Shown here piece by piece: positions 1,018 to 14,782 of a DNA stretch of 64,000 nt (its first letter is position 1; each line of letters begins with the position of its first letter). The notes beneath the pieces are model-generated. The model searched no databases, was not told the DNA's origin, and saw only the letters and a program-made list of their open reading frames with translations. The position numbers were made by a program, and so were the translations under genes. The stretch is from Magallana gigas. Taxonomy: Eukaryota. The stretch is taken from NCBI RefSeq assembly GCF_963853765.1, contig NC_088857.1:12648001-12712000 (forward strand), read 5' to 3'.

Positions 1018-2207
1018 TTATAGTGCTACATCTTTTCTCGTTAGGCTAACAACAGTACGACTCACGTCTTGCGAGTGTATGTTAAACAGAGTTGTCAGAG
1101 TCTTAAACTTGTCTCTACGGAAGTGATCACGTGGTTGCACAGCCTCTAAAGAACAGTATGTGTTTCTGGAACCGATGCTATCGTACAGAGATTCTGCGCA
1201 TGCGTCCCCCATGTGGACAATCAATTCACTGTTGATGTACACCCCTTCATTAGGGCTGTCTAATATCTCTATGGTTCTGTATGGATTTAAATCATCGAGA
1301 CTTTCCAGGTCCTGTGTTTGTCTTTGCAAAGAAAACATCGTACAATATGAGAATGTGAATGTCATATTTTGATGCAATATCTGTATTAGTTGAACAATGT
1401 TAGAAGGTTTTTTTTTCAAAATAGTTTCTATACAATTCGATAAAAAAAATTGCTAAGAAGCCTTTGTATACTAAAATAATGAAACAGTAAACTTATCCAC
1501 GGAATATTGCTATTTACCTATATGATCTTCAAAAGATTGTCCGAAAATTGCACTTACCTTCCGTCGTTTGGTAAAACTGCAGGTGTGGCTTTTTTCCTTA
1601 GGTGCAATAAAACAAGTTTTTTAAACAAAATCTTTATTATTCGAAATTGTGACGTATTATGACATATATTCTGAAAATTCAACACGGACAGGAAAGCTTT
1701 TAAACAGTTTTTGTTATGAATTTTATCTTACCTTTTCCTCCATGCAAGGTAGAACAGAAGAGTAAAAGCAATGTTCAAAACAACAAGTGTGGACATACAT
1801 ATTGAAGAAATCAAACTCACATCTTAAAACAAATGTAAAAAAAAAAATGCAAATACAATACAAAAACACCGTCAGATTTTAAGATAAATTTTATATGTAC
1901 ATACACCTTTTTATTTTACATGTTTTAAAACCTACATCAACCAAGAAGGCTGATAAGAATCAAAGTTGATTACCTATTTTGGGCGCATACTCAATTTGAT
2001 CAATGGTTTCGAGGATCTCTCGAGTGGTTATAGTTTCGTACTCTGTCTTATTAGTCCAGGCCAATGTACTTGTTGGTGCATATTCATTTGCGGTACCTGC
2101 TATGCAAACAATGCATTTTTCATCACTTTTTTTTAAATTGTTCACTAACAACGTTTGCCTTTTATCATTAATTTTATTTTGAATATTATATCGAGATCCA
2201 TAGACCG
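1018..2207 (-). CDS. Uncharacterised single-pass membrane protein, paralogue 1 (3' four exons; 5' end unresolved)
   Basis: Exons 2207-1974, 1822-1732, 1596-1558 and 1321-1018 have AG/GT boundaries and splice in frame (phases 1,1,2,2). They give ...LLVNNLKKSDEKCIVC...EYAPKI | DVSLISSICMSTLVVLNIAFTLLFYLAWRK (TM) | RKKATPAVLPNDG | RQTQDLESL...SLYDSI...DKFKTLTTLF...DVAL*. The 2207 acceptor is weaker than the others. Confidence 0.8.
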
Positions 2208-2227
2208 CTTAGTATGGTCAGGTATAC

Positions 2228-2764
2228 TTTAATGGGCATAGTCACGATTTTATCAAAAATGATTTTCTGATTTTAATCATTACAATGCTATGCTTCAGTA
2301 AGGCATTTTTAAGAAGCAACCAAAATTTAAGCGTCATTCGTTGAGTTATAAGCAAGTTACAGAGCTTACAATGTTTTGCATTGTAAACAAAGCTTTTGTT
2401 TACATTTTTGAATGTTGAAGTAAAAATTCCTTTAGACCTAAAATGAATGTATTAAACGTTAGGGAGAGTTTCTTTATGCTTAAAATGAAAAAAAAAAGAT
2501 AGACAAATCAGCTTGAAAAAGTGTTTTACTGGTTTATTGAACCTACGTAAGCAAATACAGGGCACGAGCCTTGCTTACATGACAAAGAATTGGGAGCTCT
2601 GTATCTTGCGACTGACTGTCAAATTTCATTTGATCATTAGAAATGCATCCCTAAAGTATTGTAAATAATAAAAACAGAAAAAAGGAAATTGACCAAAATT
2701 AAGACTATGAACCTTTAAAACGTTCAGTTTTCAATAAAATGATTAATCGTACATGTGTCACTTT
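2228..2764. mobile_element. Degenerate non-autonomous DNA element (TTAA-flanked MITE-like)
   Basis: The left end ttaatgggcatagtcacgatt and the right end aatcgtacatgtgtcacttttaa are imperfect inverted repeats. Confidence 0.35.
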
Positions 2765-11050: not shown

Positions 11051-11661
11051 NTTTAGAATTACACTGTATAAACATATCACGCATGAAATTGTTTTTTTTT
11101 AAATTCCCCTAATTTGGAAACTTTTAATTCTGATATCACTTGTTAATCCACAAAATAAAGATCTTTTGTTTACTGGCTTTTCCAACTTTATACGATACAT
11201 GTATATATTTAGAAATATGTGTACTGGGTTACAGATAGATGAAGCATTTATATTTTAATCGTTCATCATTAATGAGGGTCATAAATAGATCCTCGTGAAC
11301 GCAAATTGAGATTATTCATTTCATTTTAATTATACAAGGTTAAATCACTTAAATGGTCATGATGCCAATCATTATGTTACATAAATAGACCAAATTAAGA
11401 GCATGGGGAGACAATTTGTCTACACGATATTGGTCACGCAAAGATCGATCGTGTTAAGGAAGAGGTTTCCATATGGAACCTGATCTCTTATAAAATACAA
11501 ATATGGTGTTTTCTCTTGTACAAACATAATAAAACAAAATAAAATAGGTAATTTATTGATAAAAAATAATAACACATTTTGCAAAAAATTCAGATCTTAA
11601 GGAAGAATGTCTATTTATAATTAATGCTTTTTTATGGAATCATTTTTCCAAAGTTGTTATG

Positions 11662-14600
11662 CTAAACAGAGGATTCATTTTCTGGTTCCAAATTCTTTAG
11701 AATGTTTTGTACGTCTTTGGAATTTAAGTCAAAGAGTGTGGTTAGTGTGTTCCATCTGATACTTTGGCGTTTGTCACGTGACTGGACAACAATGCTGCAG
11801 GCAGAACTCCGTACGCTCTCATAAATGTGCTCTGTCGATGACGCAGGTGCGATTTCCGGTTTGCATGACTTGTAAGGCTGTTTTTCATCCGTACACTGTC
11901 TGTGCCTTATATCTTGCCTTCAATGGAGAGGAAGTAAAATTTAATCAAACGTTCAATCAAGCTTACATTTCGGAATAGTAAAACATAATCCATTAAGTAT
12001 TTAAATATGACTTAATCATTTCTGTAAATAAATACCATTTGTAGGTAACATCCTAATTTATGTTTGTTTTGATATGTATGTCTTTTCACTTTCGTGTCCA
12101 GTCCATGTATTCTTTATGAGAAGAATAATTATAGATTAATTCATGGCACAAAGGTTAGGCTTATGCCTTTTGGACGTTTTGTGACACTAACATGAGGTCT
12201 CATAATCGAGCTCAAGGTCACATCGCCGTCTACAGAGCGTGACCCTTACCCGAAGCCAATGGACCAAGGTCATGATCAGATCATCTTCAATGTGGCATTT
12301 GACACGATCCTTTGATTTTTAAATAAGATAGTAAGAAGTTAACACTTGGAAAAAATGTTGCCCATGACTAAATGAGTTTGACGTGAACATGTTAAGCGAT
12401 TGCCTGACCAATGTCCTTTGATTTTTAAATAAGATAGTAAGAAGCTTACACTTGGCACAAATGTTGTCCATGACTAAATGAGTTTGACGTGAACATGTTA
12501 AATAAGCGATTGCCTGACCAAGAATAAAATATCGTTATCAGCAGCAAATATCCAAAACAGAATCTCTGCTGGACACGTTCTTGTTGGGAATGAAATCAAG
12601 ATCATTTGTGCTAGCATTAAAAAACATTTGCTGATGATGTCAATACCTTGTAATGTGGGCGGAAGATTCTCGGAAAAAAGACAAACCAACATTTCAATGA
12701 GATAATAATTGATTCTTTTTTAAGGATGATGATATAACATTACCTTTTCTTCCAGGATATGTAGAAGTACAAAGTGAAAGTGATGTTAAACAACAGCAAC
12801 ACGAAAAGACATAGCGTTGTAATATGACCCAAATCTGTAAATATTGACAAAGTTACTGACATACTAATAAAGCACAATAATGCACTTACGTGTTTATTCA
12901 AACATATATAATATATGGAGAGAAAACAATTACATGTACAAGAAAGACTAACTCCATCTAGATATCAACAGAATGGTATAAATTTGACCCAGTTTCGTGC
13001 TTGGGACACACCAAATGATTCTATATATACTAGACTTTATAAAGAAAATGGATGGACAGTGTTTGTATGCATATTTGTCTTATGCATTTGTATTTTAATT
13101 CTTTGACATTATGCGGCAATGAAAAATAATGGTCGATCCCTAGTACATGCAATCATATGGTCAATTGCAAACATTTGTCTCCACGAGTTCCAATTTAAAT
13201 CAACGCTTTATAAATAAATATATGAAAATATTTACATTCTCAACTGTCTTTGTAACATTACGAATCAATTTTGAAGCCCATAGCCCACTGATTTCATAAA
13301 AGATGAGCGACACTTTATGGAGGTGTTAAAACATAACCGAAAAACGGTATTGGCTGCGCCGCATAGTAGTACATAGCATACGCTACATGATAAAACGGTG
13401 GTTTTAAGGAGGTTTGCACCTGAAATAATAGTAATGTCAATCATCCGAAAACCACTTCAATATTAAGAAGAATTAATAAATGAACATTATAGGTCCCAAC
13501 CTATAATGTTCATTTATTTTATTATGGAAATGTAGGCCCCCAAACAGAAATGATCTGCTAAAATTTGACACAAATATTCATGGTTTGAACTATTGTTTAG
13601 TTATGATTTTAATACAGTATGAAATTGAACACATGTAGTGACTATAAAAGTAAAATTTAAGTCAAAGTTTAAAAATTCTTGCTTTAATTACTGGTGGCTT
13701 CAAAGGCTAGTACATAATGAACACAACAACAGATGTTACAAAATTTTGGAGGAATCAAATTATAACGGAAATAAAAAAGAATATTTATAGTAATGTCATC
13801 TTTCCAAAACTTTGCATACAAATAGACATACATTTAATGTCTCATTTAAAAGTATATATAACAAGTAGGGGTCACATCTCAAATATTTGAGATATAGCAT
13901 GATAATTTTAGGCCAAAATTGGGGTTACTTTTTTCTTAACATCTATGAAATATAGCTAAATATGCCAAAATATATCGATAGAAATATCTAAATATTGTTT
14001 AGATATGTTTTTAAAACATTATGAATATATCATAACACATTTACTATCTATAAGTTTGATATGTGCTAAAAAATAGGAAGCTCTTAAACTAGTGAGTTAT
14101 GACAATTGTTCATTTCCTTCTTGAAAACCTTCCACCACAAAATATAGTCCCTTACTTAACTCTGTAAAAAGGTAATTCTTTTAATACAAATTTATTCAAT
14201 ATAGTTTATTTGGCTTTTTAAAATATTAATATACTACTATAATTAATATGAGATGCAGAATTTTCAGACTAGAGGTGCCCCAAAATGGCTTCCCAAAACC
14301 TAAGGAGCTAACCTCTTTTAAATGTGGTTTTAAAATTGGAAATACTATGAATGTAAGTAATGAAGAGTCATTCTTTGTATATTAACTTTATTGGATTTGA
14401 CCACGCCCCGACAAAAATAATCACCTCATAGTACTCAAAGAATGATTCCTTATTCCTTAAATAAGTCAAAAAATTTAAACCTAGATTTTAACATACACAG
14501 TATTTTAATGGTAATCATTTTGTATTCAAATCATGTTCAATTTTTGTTGTCCTTTGCTATAAAATTTCAAATTACGTACCGAAAGTGAGAGACGAAGGGT

Positions 14601-14782
14601 CAGACTTTTCGGTTCCGATTGGGGTTGTAGTCGATAGATTCTGTATAGGCATTTGCATCGGACTGTTTCTGAATATAAAAAAAACCTGAACAATAAAGAA
14701 GTGATAAAATTAATCGCATATGATAGATTTTACCTTGTTTTAAAACAGAAATTGTAATTTGTGCGGCTTGCAGATTTAAATT
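11662..14782 (-). CDS. Uncharacterised single-pass membrane protein, paralogue 3 (3' exons)
   Basis: Exons: 14782-14734, 14668-14580 (stalk NSPMQMPIQNLSTTTPIGTEKSDPSSLTF), 12834-12744 (91-nt TM exon DLGHITTLCLFVLLLFNITFTLYFYISWKK) and 11917-11662 (RQDIRHRQ...IRWNTLTTLF...ENESSV*). They splice in frame and are clearly homologous to paralogue 2. Confidence 0.8.
12308..12520. repeat. ~106-bp direct tandem duplication
   Basis: tcctttgatttttaaataagatagtaagaag...tgcctgacca starts at 12308 and again at 12414. Confidence 0.9.
13403..14320. mobile_element. TTAA-flanked non-autonomous DNA transposon (Kolobok/piggyBac-type ends) in a paralogue 3 intron
   Basis: The left end ttaaggaggtttgcacc and the right end ggagctaacctctttaa are imperfect inverted repeats bounded by TTAA. 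There is no long ORF inside. Confidence 0.45.

What the first reader, a model, noticed from the sequence alone, without database searches (positions are those of the whole stretch)
1018..14782. Hidden tandem family of three orphan single-pass membrane receptors with a shared cytoplasmic motif
Seen in sequence: three minus-strand gene ends share an identically sized 91-nt phase 1-2 TM exon (1732-1822, 7637-7727, 12744-12834), each ending W-[RK]-K-R. Their last exons diverge except for a conserved block: P1 YDSIGSR..YC...DKFKTLTTLFNIHSQDV, P2 YDTLDSRYC...DKWKTLTTFFTLNAKDVQNIL, P3 YESVRSSAC...IRWNTLTTLFDLNSKDVQNIL. Paralogues 2 and 3 are absent from the ORF track. I do not recognise the [DI][KR][FW]xTLTTxF..DV motif as a named domain. 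Inference: this is a locally expanded, fast-evolving receptor family with a conserved effector-binding helix, possibly immune or cell-recognition related. It is the best candidate for an undescribed system in this window.
Basis: partly seen in the sequence, partly recalled or inferred. Interest (0 to 1): 0.72.

Follow-up and report, generated by a model that had tools for sequence, protein, structure and literature searches.

The report
Oyster-specific small transmembrane adaptor-like family
The three predicted gene ends are real, spliced and transcribed oyster genes. They belong to a six-member family found only in oysters: small single-pass membrane proteins with a tiny sugar-bearing outer part and a signalling-type tail, so they look like membrane adaptors rather than ligand-binding receptors, and their function is untested.

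Summary
All three 91-nt TM exons and tail exons exist as described.

- P1 has 6 exons and encodes 220 aa. It is NCBI 'uncharacterized LOC128158823' in C. angulata.
- P2 has 4 exons and encodes 153 aa. It was found only in transcript assemblies.
- P3 has 4 exons and encodes 141 aa. It is LOC105341385.
- The assembly gap at 10920-11051 is intergenic, between the P3 poly(A) site (~11540) and P2 exon 1 (9228).

The family is larger than reported. Five genes lie in tandem, two of them left of the window, and one lies 6 Mb away. All six have a 91-nt TM exon. A profile search of 1.84 billion proteins found only oyster proteins (Crassostrea, Ostrea, Saccostrea), all unnamed. Pfam and PDB gave no match.

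The proteins have no signal peptide and a 19-95 aa acidic N-terminus that usually carries an N-glycosylation sequon. The TM helix has an invariant Asn. P2 and P3 end in a PDZ-binding motif.

dN/dS is 0.17-0.30 overall and about 0.1 in the TM segment.

The best reading is a transmembrane adaptor or accessory subunit. The mechanism is inferred, not shown.

The parts
832..3750 (-). Gene P1, 220 aa, 99% identical over the tail exon (98% over the exon before the TM exon) to C. angulata LOC128158823. Exons: 3750-3663 (ATG at 3699), 3068-3003, 2099-1974, 1822-1732 (91-nt TM exon), 1596-1558 (39-nt microexon encoding KKATPAVLPNDG), 1321-832 (coding to 1021, stop at 1018-1020).
   Evidence: Logan transcript contig L017 aligns in six blocks with GT..AG borders. 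Protein P0002/P0004. The spliced translation gives an intact 220-aa ORF.
5585..9228 (-). Gene P2, 153 aa, with no named database entry. Exons: 9228-9125 (5'UTR), 8346-8270 (ATG at 8336), 7727-7637 (91-nt TM exon), 6977-5585 (coding to 6677, stop at 6674-6676, about 1.1 kb 3'UTR). It ends in -ESPV.
   Evidence: Four transcript contigs from four runs (L011-L014) align as spliced blocks. The splice sites were checked. Protein P0029 differs from the window translation by one residue.
11540..15552 (-). Gene P3, 141 aa, C. gigas LOC105341385. Exons: >=15552-15490 (5'UTR), 14668-14580 (ATG at 14658), 12834-12744 (91-nt TM exon), 11917-~11540 (coding to 11665, stop at 11662-11664, AATAAA at 11552-11557). 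It ends in -ESSV.
   Evidence: read laying joints 11916|12743 (4 runs), 12834|14580 (3 runs) and 14668|15490 (3 runs), all GT..AG on the minus strand. Poly(A) signal. P0073 = XP_034319123.1.
1732..1822 (-). P1 TM exon, 91 nt, phase 1 -> 2, with the invariant Asn (VVLNIAF).
7637..7727 (-). P2 TM exon, 91 nt, phase 1 -> 2, with the invariant Asn (LLFNLTF).
12744..12834 (-). P3 TM exon, 91 nt, phase 1 -> 2, with the invariant Asn (LLFNITF).
1021..1108 (-). P1 C-terminal conserved block DKFKTLTTLFNIHSQDVSRTVVSL, predicted amphipathic helix.
6677..6778 (-). P2 C-terminal conserved block DKWKTLTTFFTLNAKDVQNILSKIE (AF2 helix, residues 127-149) followed by the class I PDZ ligand -ESPV.
11665..11766 (-). 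P3 C-terminal conserved block IRWNTLTTLFDLNSKDVQNILKNLE followed by -ESSV.
10920..11051 (.). Assembly gap. It lies in the intergenic space between the P3 3' end and P2 exon 1 and is not part of any exon found.

Best explanation
The three gene ends belong to a real, expressed gene family found only in true oysters (Ostreidae). In this genome, which matches Magallana/Crassostrea gigas chromosome-scale contig C5, five members lie head-to-tail within about 31 kb. From left to right these are LOC105341380, LOC105341382, P1, P2 and P3. A sixth member lies 6 Mb away.

Each gene encodes a small protein (141-272 aa) with no signal peptide. The parts are:
- a short, acidic N-terminus that usually carries an N-glycosylation sequon, inferred to be extracellular (a type III, N-out single-pass protein);
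- a strongly conserved TM helix with an invariant mid-membrane Asn and an FY..W[KR]K[KR] exit;
- a disordered cytoplasmic tail;
- a conserved C-terminal amphipathic helix, KTLTTLF..[HN]S.DV..[TI][LV]..L.

The two best-conserved tail residues are tyrosines in Yxx[I/V/L] context, 11-14 residues apart. In LOC105341382, LOC105341380 and the C. virginica and Ostrea edulis members they fit the broad ITAM consensus D/ExxYxxI-x(11-12)-YxxI exactly. P2 keeps a near-ITAM (YTGV-x11-YDTL). P1 has a weakened first motif. P3 has lost the second tyrosine. The P2/P3 branch has gained a class I PDZ ligand (-ES[PS]V).

Most likely mechanism (inferred): these are transmembrane adaptor or accessory subunits, not receptors. 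The conserved TM helix docks through its polar Asn to a partner membrane protein or to itself. After tyrosine phosphorylation, the disordered tail recruits SH2 proteins; Syk, which is known to bind an ITAM in the oyster, is the obvious candidate. The terminal helix, and in P2/P3 the PDZ ligand, tether further effectors.

Shown here: gene structures, transcription, family extent, taxonomic restriction, purifying selection, predicted TM and terminal helices, and motif conservation.

Inferred: topology, phosphorylation, partners and any immune role.
For: **Real genes.** Spliced transcript contigs support P1 and P2. P3 joints were seen in four runs from four studies. All three ORFs are intact. Orthologue dN/dS is 0.17-0.30, with 0.10 in the TM segment and 0.14-0.17 in the C-terminal block.

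**Family extent.** Profile searches of the window's own genome find exactly six loci. All six have a 91-nt TM exon.

**Taxonomic range.** A profile search of 1.84e9 representative proteins gives 22 hits. Every one that carries a name is from an oyster (C. gigas, C. angulata, C. virginica, Ostrea edulis, Saccostrea) and is called 'uncharacterized'.

**Build.** There is no Pfam or PDB match. AF2 predicts a TM helix at residues 21-66 (pLDDT up to 98), a disordered stretch at 70-123 and a helix at 127-149 (pLDDT about 80). The N-termini are 19-95 aa in the full-length models without an added outer domain. Their net charge is 0 to -8, and 12 of 14 carry an N-x-S/T sequon, against a basic WKKRQ.IRRRQ inner flank.

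**Conserved columns.** N39, F46, Y47 and W50 are invariant. Y86 and Y101 are at least 90% conserved, as are T126, L127, F131 and V138.

**ITAM-like pair.** The pair sits in the same alignment columns across genera. A shuffled tail meets the strict consensus in only 0.02-0.3% of trials.

**Pathway present in oyster.** Oyster Syk binds an ITAM of the same broad consensus in CgIgR (PMC6994640).

**Weak lead only.** The nearest named ESM-Atlas clusters by language-model features are the vertebrate transmembrane adaptors SCIMP, LIME1 and GAPT, together with other small single-pass proteins.
Against: - No experiment or expression context links the family to immunity or to tyrosine phosphorylation.
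- The ITAM spacing (11-14) is longer than the classical 6-8. The motif is degenerate or partly lost in the window's own three genes, including V at +3 in P2.
- Yxx-hydrophobic motifs are also endocytic sorting signals.
- The TM polar residue is Asn, not the Asp of DAP12, FcR-gamma and CD3-zeta.
- There is no extracellular Cys for a disulfide dimer and no juxtamembrane CxxC palmitoylation motif as in LAT, PAG and LIME.
- The ESM-Atlas scores are about 0.9 with fewer than 170 shared features, so they do not show homology.
- The homodimer prediction gave no answer.
Confidence: 0.5

Rival explanations
1. The proteins are accessory (beta-type) subunits of an ion channel, pump or transporter, in the manner of KCNE, FXYD or TMIE. 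The conserved TM helix packs against the partner's TM domain. The tyrosine motifs serve as YxxPhi sorting or endocytosis signals, and the terminal helix regulates gating or trafficking.
For: The architecture is the same: no signal peptide, a short glycosylated N-terminus, a single TM and a short tail with a helix. The TM segment is the most constrained part (dN/dS 0.10) and has an invariant polar Asn. TMIE and stannin are among the ESM-Atlas look-alikes. Every conserved tyrosine also fits YxxPhi.
Against: Two tyrosines at a fixed spacing, preceded by acidic residues (D/E-x-x-Y), are more typical of kinase/SH2 motifs than of a single sorting signal. There is no sequence similarity to any KCNE, FXYD or TMIE Pfam model. 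This reading overlaps with the best explanation on the 'accessory subunit' point.
Confidence: 0.25
2. One reading: each protein is itself a ligand-binding, fast-evolving immune or cell-recognition receptor.
For: The genes are tandemly duplicated. The ectodomain and mid-tail diverge fastest (dN/dS 0.65-0.90 between P2 and P3). One Saccostrea member (P0025) carries a longer Cys-containing N-terminal extension.
Against: The ectodomains of P2 and P3 are about 25-29 aa, and P1's is 79 aa. They are low-complexity, Cys-free and domain-free. No positive selection was detected, with orthologue dN/dS at 0.17-0.30.
Confidence: 0.1
3. The three TM-plus-tail units are alternative 3' ends of the upstream cadherin-domain gene, like a reversed clustered-protocadherin layout, rather than separate genes.
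For: A cadherin-domain gene lies immediately upstream on the same strand (PF00028, E 8.5e-9).
Against: The open frame holding the cadherin gene's spliced exon 17041-17268 encodes a hydrophobic TM-like stretch of its own, and the transcript continues into its own downstream exons to 16458. P1, P2 and P3 each have their own 5' exon and start codon. No contig joins cadherin exons to P3. Members to the left of the window and in other species encode complete stand-alone proteins.
Confidence: 0.01
4. The genes are transcribed but functionless young duplicates on the way to becoming pseudogenes.
For: P3 has lost the second tyrosine and P1's first motif is weakened. The mid-tail between P2 and P3 evolves almost neutrally (dN/dS 0.90).
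Against: All ORFs are intact. Orthologues of P1, P2 and P3 are each kept in other Crassostrea-type transcriptomes at dS of about 0.35-0.7 with dN/dS 0.17-0.30. The TM segment and C-terminal helix are strongly constrained.
Confidence: 0.04

Closest known systems
Vertebrate transmembrane adaptor proteins (TRAPs: SCIMP, LIME1, GAPT, PAG/Cbp, LAT)
   Same: They are small type III single-pass proteins with a very short ectodomain, no signal peptide and a disordered tail carrying several Yxx-hydrophobic motifs. From my own knowledge, PAG also ends in a PDZ ligand, as P2 and P3 do. SCIMP, LIME1 and GAPT are the nearest named ESM-Atlas feature clusters.
   Different: There is no detectable sequence homology and no juxtamembrane CxxC palmitoylation motif. 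This family has an invariant TM Asn and a conserved C-terminal helix that TRAPs lack. It is restricted to oysters.
ITAM signalling subunits DAP12 / FcR-gamma / CD3-zeta
   Same: They have a tiny ectodomain, a TM helix with a conserved polar residue used for partner assembly, and a cytoplasmic tail whose main conserved feature is a paired YxxL/I motif.
   Different: The TM residue here is Asn, not Asp. There is no extracellular Cys and no signal peptide. The spacing is 11-14 rather than 6-8. The family has an extra C-terminal helix. No homology was detected.
CgIgR, the oyster ITAM receptor that recruits CgSyk (PMC6994640), and Drosophila Draper (own knowledge: ITAM with 11-residue spacing bound by Shark)
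   Same: They are invertebrate membrane proteins whose tails fit D/ExxYxxL/I-x(6-12)-YxxL/I. They show that a Syk pathway able to read such motifs exists in oysters.
   Different: CgIgR and Draper have large ligand-binding ectodomains (five Ig domains, or EGF repeats). This family has almost none. No binding to Syk has been tested for it.
KCNE / FXYD / TMIE single-pass accessory subunits
   Same: They have a short N-glycosylated N-terminus without a cleaved signal peptide, a functionally critical TM helix and a short helical tail.
   Different: There is no sequence match. Those families are not characterised by paired acidic-tyrosine motifs.

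Membership tests
ITAM-bearing signalling subunits (DAP12/FcR-gamma/CD3-zeta type) | Cytoplasmic D/ExxYxxL/I-x(6-8, broadly 6-12)-YxxL/I | tested here: inconclusive
   The broad consensus (x11-12) is met exactly in LOC105341382, LOC105341380 and the C. virginica and O. edulis members. P2 is a near match (V at +3, x11). P1 has x5 between its second and third tyrosines. P3 has lost the second Tyr. No member has the classical 6-8 spacing for the conserved pair.
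ITAM-bearing signalling subunits (DAP12/FcR-gamma/CD3-zeta type) | Acidic (Asp) residue in the TM helix pairing with a basic residue of a receptor | tested here: not met
   The conserved TM polar residue is Asn (invariant N39). No Asp or Glu is present inside the hydrophobic core of the TM helix.
ITAM-bearing signalling subunits (DAP12/FcR-gamma/CD3-zeta type) | Signal peptide and extracellular Cys forming disulfide-linked dimers | tested here: not met
   The N-termini are hydrophilic, and the ectodomains of P1, P2, P3, LOC105341382 and LOC105341380 contain no Cys.
ITAM-bearing signalling subunits (DAP12/FcR-gamma/CD3-zeta type) | Phospho-dependent binding of Syk/ZAP-70 tandem SH2 domains | not testable with these tools
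   This needs phosphopeptide pull-down or co-immunoprecipitation with CgSyk.
Transmembrane adaptor proteins (LAT/PAG/LIME/SCIMP) | Type III topology with a very short ectodomain and no signal peptide | tested here: met
   The acidic N-termini are 19-95 aa long, excluding the one Saccostrea model with an added Cys-containing N-terminal extension, and 12 of 14 carry a sequon. The inner flank is basic. AF2 predicts a single TM helix. Topology is inferred from the positive-inside rule and the sequons, not measured.
Transmembrane adaptor proteins (LAT/PAG/LIME/SCIMP) | Juxtamembrane CxxC / Cys palmitoylation motif | tested here: not met
   The TM helix exits as FY..W[KR]K[KR]Q with no Cys. The only conserved Cys lies near the outer end of the TM helix.
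Transmembrane adaptor proteins (LAT/PAG/LIME/SCIMP) | Sequence membership in the Pfam families (PF15050 SCIMP, PF15332 LIME1, PF11770 GAPT) | tested here: not met
   hmmscan of 13 members at E<=1 lists none of these families. The resemblance comes from ESM features only, at scores 0.87-0.91.
Cadherin / clustered-protocadherin alternative exons | Splicing of the TM and tail exons to the upstream cadherin ectodomain exons | tested here: not met
   Each gene has its own 5' exon and ATG. No joint links the cadherin exons to P3.
Class I PDZ ligand (P2/P3 branch only) | C-terminal [S/T]-x-hydrophobic, conserved in orthologues | tested here: met
   -ESPV in P2 and its two orthologues. -ESSV in P3, LOC105341385 and P0014. 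-ESAL in P0016. Binding itself was not tested.

The most novel reading that the evidence does not exclude
Oysters have evolved their own family of ITAM-type signalling subunits. These would be functional analogues of DAP12/FcR-gamma that pair through a polar TM Asn with tail-less surface receptors and couple them to Syk. The tandem copies P1, P2 and P3 would be rewired derivatives: P3 has lost one tyrosine, and P2 and P3 have gained a PDZ ligand. That would be an independent invention of modular 'receptor plus ITAM adaptor' signalling outside the vertebrates.
Probability: 0.2. Interest if true: 0.75.

Novelty: new variant of a known kind. Interest (0 to 1): 0.42.

Why it matters
If the tail tyrosines are read by Syk or other SH2 proteins, this would be the first adaptor-type ITAM subunit, as opposed to an ITAM-bearing receptor, described in a mollusc. 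It would give a handle on how oyster surface receptors without signalling tails transmit signals.

Even without that, the work delivers three things:
- corrected gene models, including one gene (P2) with no named database entry;
- a family definition: a 91-nt TM exon, an invariant TM Asn, a tyrosine pair and a KTLTTLF helix;
- a clear statement that the family is restricted to oysters.

Lineage-restricted uncharacterised families are common in oyster genomes, so without functional data this is a moderately interesting annotation result and not a surprise.

Tried and rejected
- **Homodimer prediction (complex prediction, two copies of P2/P0029).** Score 0.01, verdict 'no answer'. This is not evidence either way.
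- **Pfam.** Scans of the tails and of 13 full-length members gave only sub-threshold noise such as Orthopox_A36R, MBG_3, Orf78 and Vpu.
- **PDB profile search.** Nothing meaningful.
- **Literature.** Searches for all LOC and UniProt identifiers and for the SRA run numbers gave zero papers.
- **ESM-Atlas structure search.** Only long-helix look-alikes with TM-scores below 0.5.
- **Rfam on the high-depth stretch inside P3 intron 2.** Nothing above threshold. It behaves like a dispersed repeat.
- **Cadherin alternative-3'-end idea.** Rejected on the transcript evidence.
- **Raw-read RNA runs.** I did not lay them. Reads were laid on contigs from four studies, so strand and expression level were not measured.
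- **Fold search.** Not run, because the model is one TM helix, a disordered stretch and one short helix.

Full report
**Source.** The window is G000:C5:12648001-12712000 of a 564-Mb assembly. Contig C5 is 57,274,926 bases long. That equals the contig length recorded for a Magallana (Crassostrea) gigas RefSeq protein of this same locus. The encoded proteins are 97-100% identical to C. gigas and C. angulata entries. GC content is 33%.

**Observation.** The three minus-strand exons 1732-1822, 7637-7727 and 12744-12834 are each exactly 91 nt. Each is flanked by AG and GT. Read from their third base, each encodes a hydrophobic helix ending W-[RK]-K plus a split Arg codon. The tail exons contain the quoted blocks.

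The resemblance is far beyond chance. P2 and P3 share 84% DNA identity over the TM exon (E 6e-29), 74% over the end of the tail exon (E 9e-14), and a third similar exon at 8244-8339 versus 14554-14649. P1 matches the other TM exons at E 5e-7 to 3e-6 at protein level.

**Assembly gap.** The gap at 10920-11051 lies between genes. The P3 transcript ends near 11540, 12-17 nt after an AATAAA at 11552-11557, and two independent contigs stop exactly there. P2's first exon is at 9125-9228. No exon or frame crosses the gap. I neither filled it nor looked it up.

**Gene models and transcription.**
- P1: a 907-nt Logan transcript contig (L017) aligns in six blocks. The exons are 3750-3663, 3068-3003, 2099-1974, 1822-1732, 1596-1558 and 1321-832. 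They give an intact 220-aa ORF whose tail exon is 99% identical to XP_052677746 'uncharacterized protein LOC128158823' of C. angulata.
- P2: four transcript contigs from four runs (L011-L014) give exons 9228-9125, 8346-8270, 7727-7637 and 6977-5585, and a 153-aa protein. Its 90%-identity cluster holds only Logan transcript-derived sequences with no NCBI or UniProt name.
- P3: I laid the contigs of four runs from four studies on 11300-17299. Joints 11916|12743 (four runs), 12834|14580 (three runs) and 14668|15490 (three runs) are all CT..AC on the plus strand, which is GT..AG on the minus strand. The spliced ORF is 141 aa. It is 92% identical to XP_034319123 'uncharacterized protein LOC105341385'.

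The upstream cadherin-domain gene (PF00028, E 8.5e-9) has its own spliced exons down to 16458, and the open frame holding the first of them encodes a hydrophobic TM-like stretch. No contig joins it to P3. The 'alternative cadherin tails' idea is therefore rejected.

**Extent of the family.** Protein and profile searches of the whole genome find exactly six loci. Five lie in tandem on the same strand within about 31 kb: LOC105341380 at C5:12.632 Mb, LOC105341382 at 12.646 Mb, then P1, P2 and P3. One lies at C5:18.537-18.542 Mb. All six have a 91-nt phase 1->2 TM exon.

A HMMER profile search of 1.84 billion representative proteins returned 22 hits at E<=1e-3. Every hit that carries a name is from an oyster: C. 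gigas, C. angulata, C. virginica, Ostrea edulis, Saccostrea cucullata or S. echinata. All are labelled 'uncharacterized'. A second, word-seeded profile search gave the same picture.

A maximum-likelihood tree resolves three well-supported Crassostrea subfamilies: P1; P2+P3; and LOC105341382/380 together with the C. virginica gene. Orthologues of P1, P2 and P3 occur in at least one other species' transcriptome, so the P2/P3 duplication predates that split.

**Selection.** Nei-Gojobori dN/dS is 0.30 for P1, 0.17-0.21 for P2 and 0.21 for P3 against orthologues at dS 0.35-0.72. By region, for P2 against its orthologue and against P3 respectively:

| Region | P2 vs orthologue | P2 vs P3 |
|---|---|---|
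| TM plus juxtamembrane | 0.10 | 0.11 |
| C-terminal block | 0.14 | 0.17 |
| Ectodomain | 0.39 | 0.65 |
| Mid-tail | 0.31 | 0.90 |

The genes are functional. 'Fast-evolving' applies only to the linker regions. I found no sign of positive selection with this coarse method.

**Anatomy.**
- Across the 14 full-length models the N-terminus is hydrophilic, with no signal peptide. The exception is one Saccostrea model, which has a longer Cys-containing extension with a hydrophobic start.
- Leaving that model aside, the N-terminus is 19-95 aa long and has net charge 0 to -8. In 12 of the 14 it carries an N-x-S/T sequon.
- The TM helix is followed by a strongly basic stretch, W[KR]K[KR]Q.[IV]R[RH]RQS.
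- By the positive-inside rule and the sequons, the N-terminus is outside. This is inferred.
- AF2 with the family alignment predicts one long helix at residues 21-66 (pLDDT up to 98), a disordered segment at 70-123 and a C-terminal helix at 127-149 (pLDDT about 80).
It is moderately amphipathic, with muH 0.29-0.47, higher than 74-99% of shuffles depending on the member.
- Invariant columns are the mid-membrane Asn and the F-Y..W exit of the helix.
- The near-invariant cytoplasmic columns are two tyrosines (Y86 and Y101 in P2 numbering) and T126, L127, F131 and V138 of the helix.

**The tyrosines.** Both sit in Yxx[I/V/L] context, 11-14 residues apart, and the first is usually preceded by D/E at -3. 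Examples:

| Member | Motif |
|---|---|
| LOC105341382 | DPIYADI-x12-YACI |
| LOC105341380 | DDVYADI-x12-YKYI |
| C. virginica | DNVYADI-x12-YAAI |
| O. edulis | EDVYSNI-x11-YTTI |
| P2 | HAYTGV-x11-YDTL |
| Saccostrea | x11 or x14 |

The first four meet the broad ITAM consensus D/ExxYxxL/I-x(6-12)-YxxL/I, which is the definition used for the oyster receptor CgIgR (PMC6994640). Shuffled tails meet it in only 0.02-0.3% of trials.

The Crassostrea members other than P2 and P3 add a third motif, NTYxxL, 5-9 residues further on. In the window's own genes the pair is eroded. P1's first motif ends in Ser. P3 has a deletion that removes the second tyrosine.

The P2/P3 branch ends in -ES[PS]V or -ESAL, a class I PDZ ligand kept in all its orthologues.

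**Interpretation.** A 20-30-residue, Cys-free, mucin-like ectodomain cannot plausibly be a specific ligand-binding module. The strongest constraint is on the TM helix with its polar Asn, which points to an intramembrane protein-protein contact. A disordered tail whose best-kept residues are an acidic-tyrosine pair, followed by a short helix and, in two members, a PDZ ligand, is the layout of a scaffold.

I therefore read the family as transmembrane adaptors or accessory subunits. The nearest functional analogues are the vertebrate TRAPs (SCIMP, LIME1, GAPT, PAG) and the ITAM subunits DAP12 and FcR-gamma. As a weak lead only, SCIMP, LIME1 and GAPT are the nearest named ESM-Atlas feature clusters, at scores 0.87-0.91 with fewer than 170 shared features.

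Membership in any of these families fails. There is no Pfam match, no palmitoylation Cys, no TM Asp, no ectodomain Cys and non-classical spacing. So it may work like an adaptor but belongs to none of these families.

The main rival is a KCNE/FXYD/TMIE-like accessory subunit of a channel or transporter, with the tyrosines acting as sorting signals. My data cannot separate the two.

**What did not help.** The homodimer prediction gave no verdict. The PDB profile search found nothing. No paper mentions any of the gene identifiers or runs. Tissue and challenge expression could not be assessed, because the runs are coded and only contigs were laid.

**Verdict.** The thing is a genuine, oyster-restricted, uncharacterised family of small single-pass proteins. 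Part of it is already in databases as unnamed LOCs, and one gene (P2) has no named entry. It is better described as adaptor-like than as a receptor. The ITAM/Syk mechanism is an attractive, testable inference with roughly 20-30% probability. Interest is moderate.

Noticed in passing
window 16458-20000 (minus strand): A cadherin-domain gene lies directly upstream of P3. Pfam PF00028 matches 17415-17933 at E 8.5e-9. Spliced exons 17268-17041, 16939-16911, 16812-16739 and 16557-16458 were seen in one run. The second assembly gap, 18649-18793, lies inside one of its open frames.
   Followed up: partly
G000:C5:12631949-12632808 (L009) and C5:12645689-12646462 (L004), left of the window: Two more tandem family members lie here, LOC105341380 and LOC105341382. 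They carry the best-preserved ITAM-like motifs and the same 91-nt TM exon. A sixth member with a tail exon of about 230 aa (full proteins of 270-272 aa in the transcript models) lies at C5:18537043-18542227 (L010, L021).
   Followed up: yes
P0005 = UniProt K1QDF9_MAGGI: This old C. gigas gene model is a chimera. It fuses most of the P1 tail exon to the tail of LOC105341382 and lacks any TM segment.
   Followed up: partly
window 14300-14499 (inside P3 intron 2): This stretch has very high summed depth in RNA-derived contigs (343-1291) with many loose ends on both sides, as expected of a dispersed repeat present in many transcripts. It matches no Rfam family.
   Followed up: partly
window 26862-28511, 38023-40076 and 61107-61910: Three tandem-repeat arrays, with units of about 180 bp (95-98% identity), about 590 bp (70-76%) and about 172 bp (86-90%).
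   Followed up: no
window 8270-8510: One P2 transcript contig (L011) runs unspliced from 8510 into exon 2 instead of using the 9125-9228 first exon. This is either an alternative start or a retained intron. P0034, a 164-aa variant with an upstream in-frame ATG, probably reflects it.
   Followed up: no
P0025 (Saccostrea echinata LOC133176555): This family member has a 145-aa N-terminal part with a hydrophobic start and six Cys, including a WSPWS-like string. It has no Pfam hit. It is either a true ectodomain gain or a merged gene model.
   Followed up: partly
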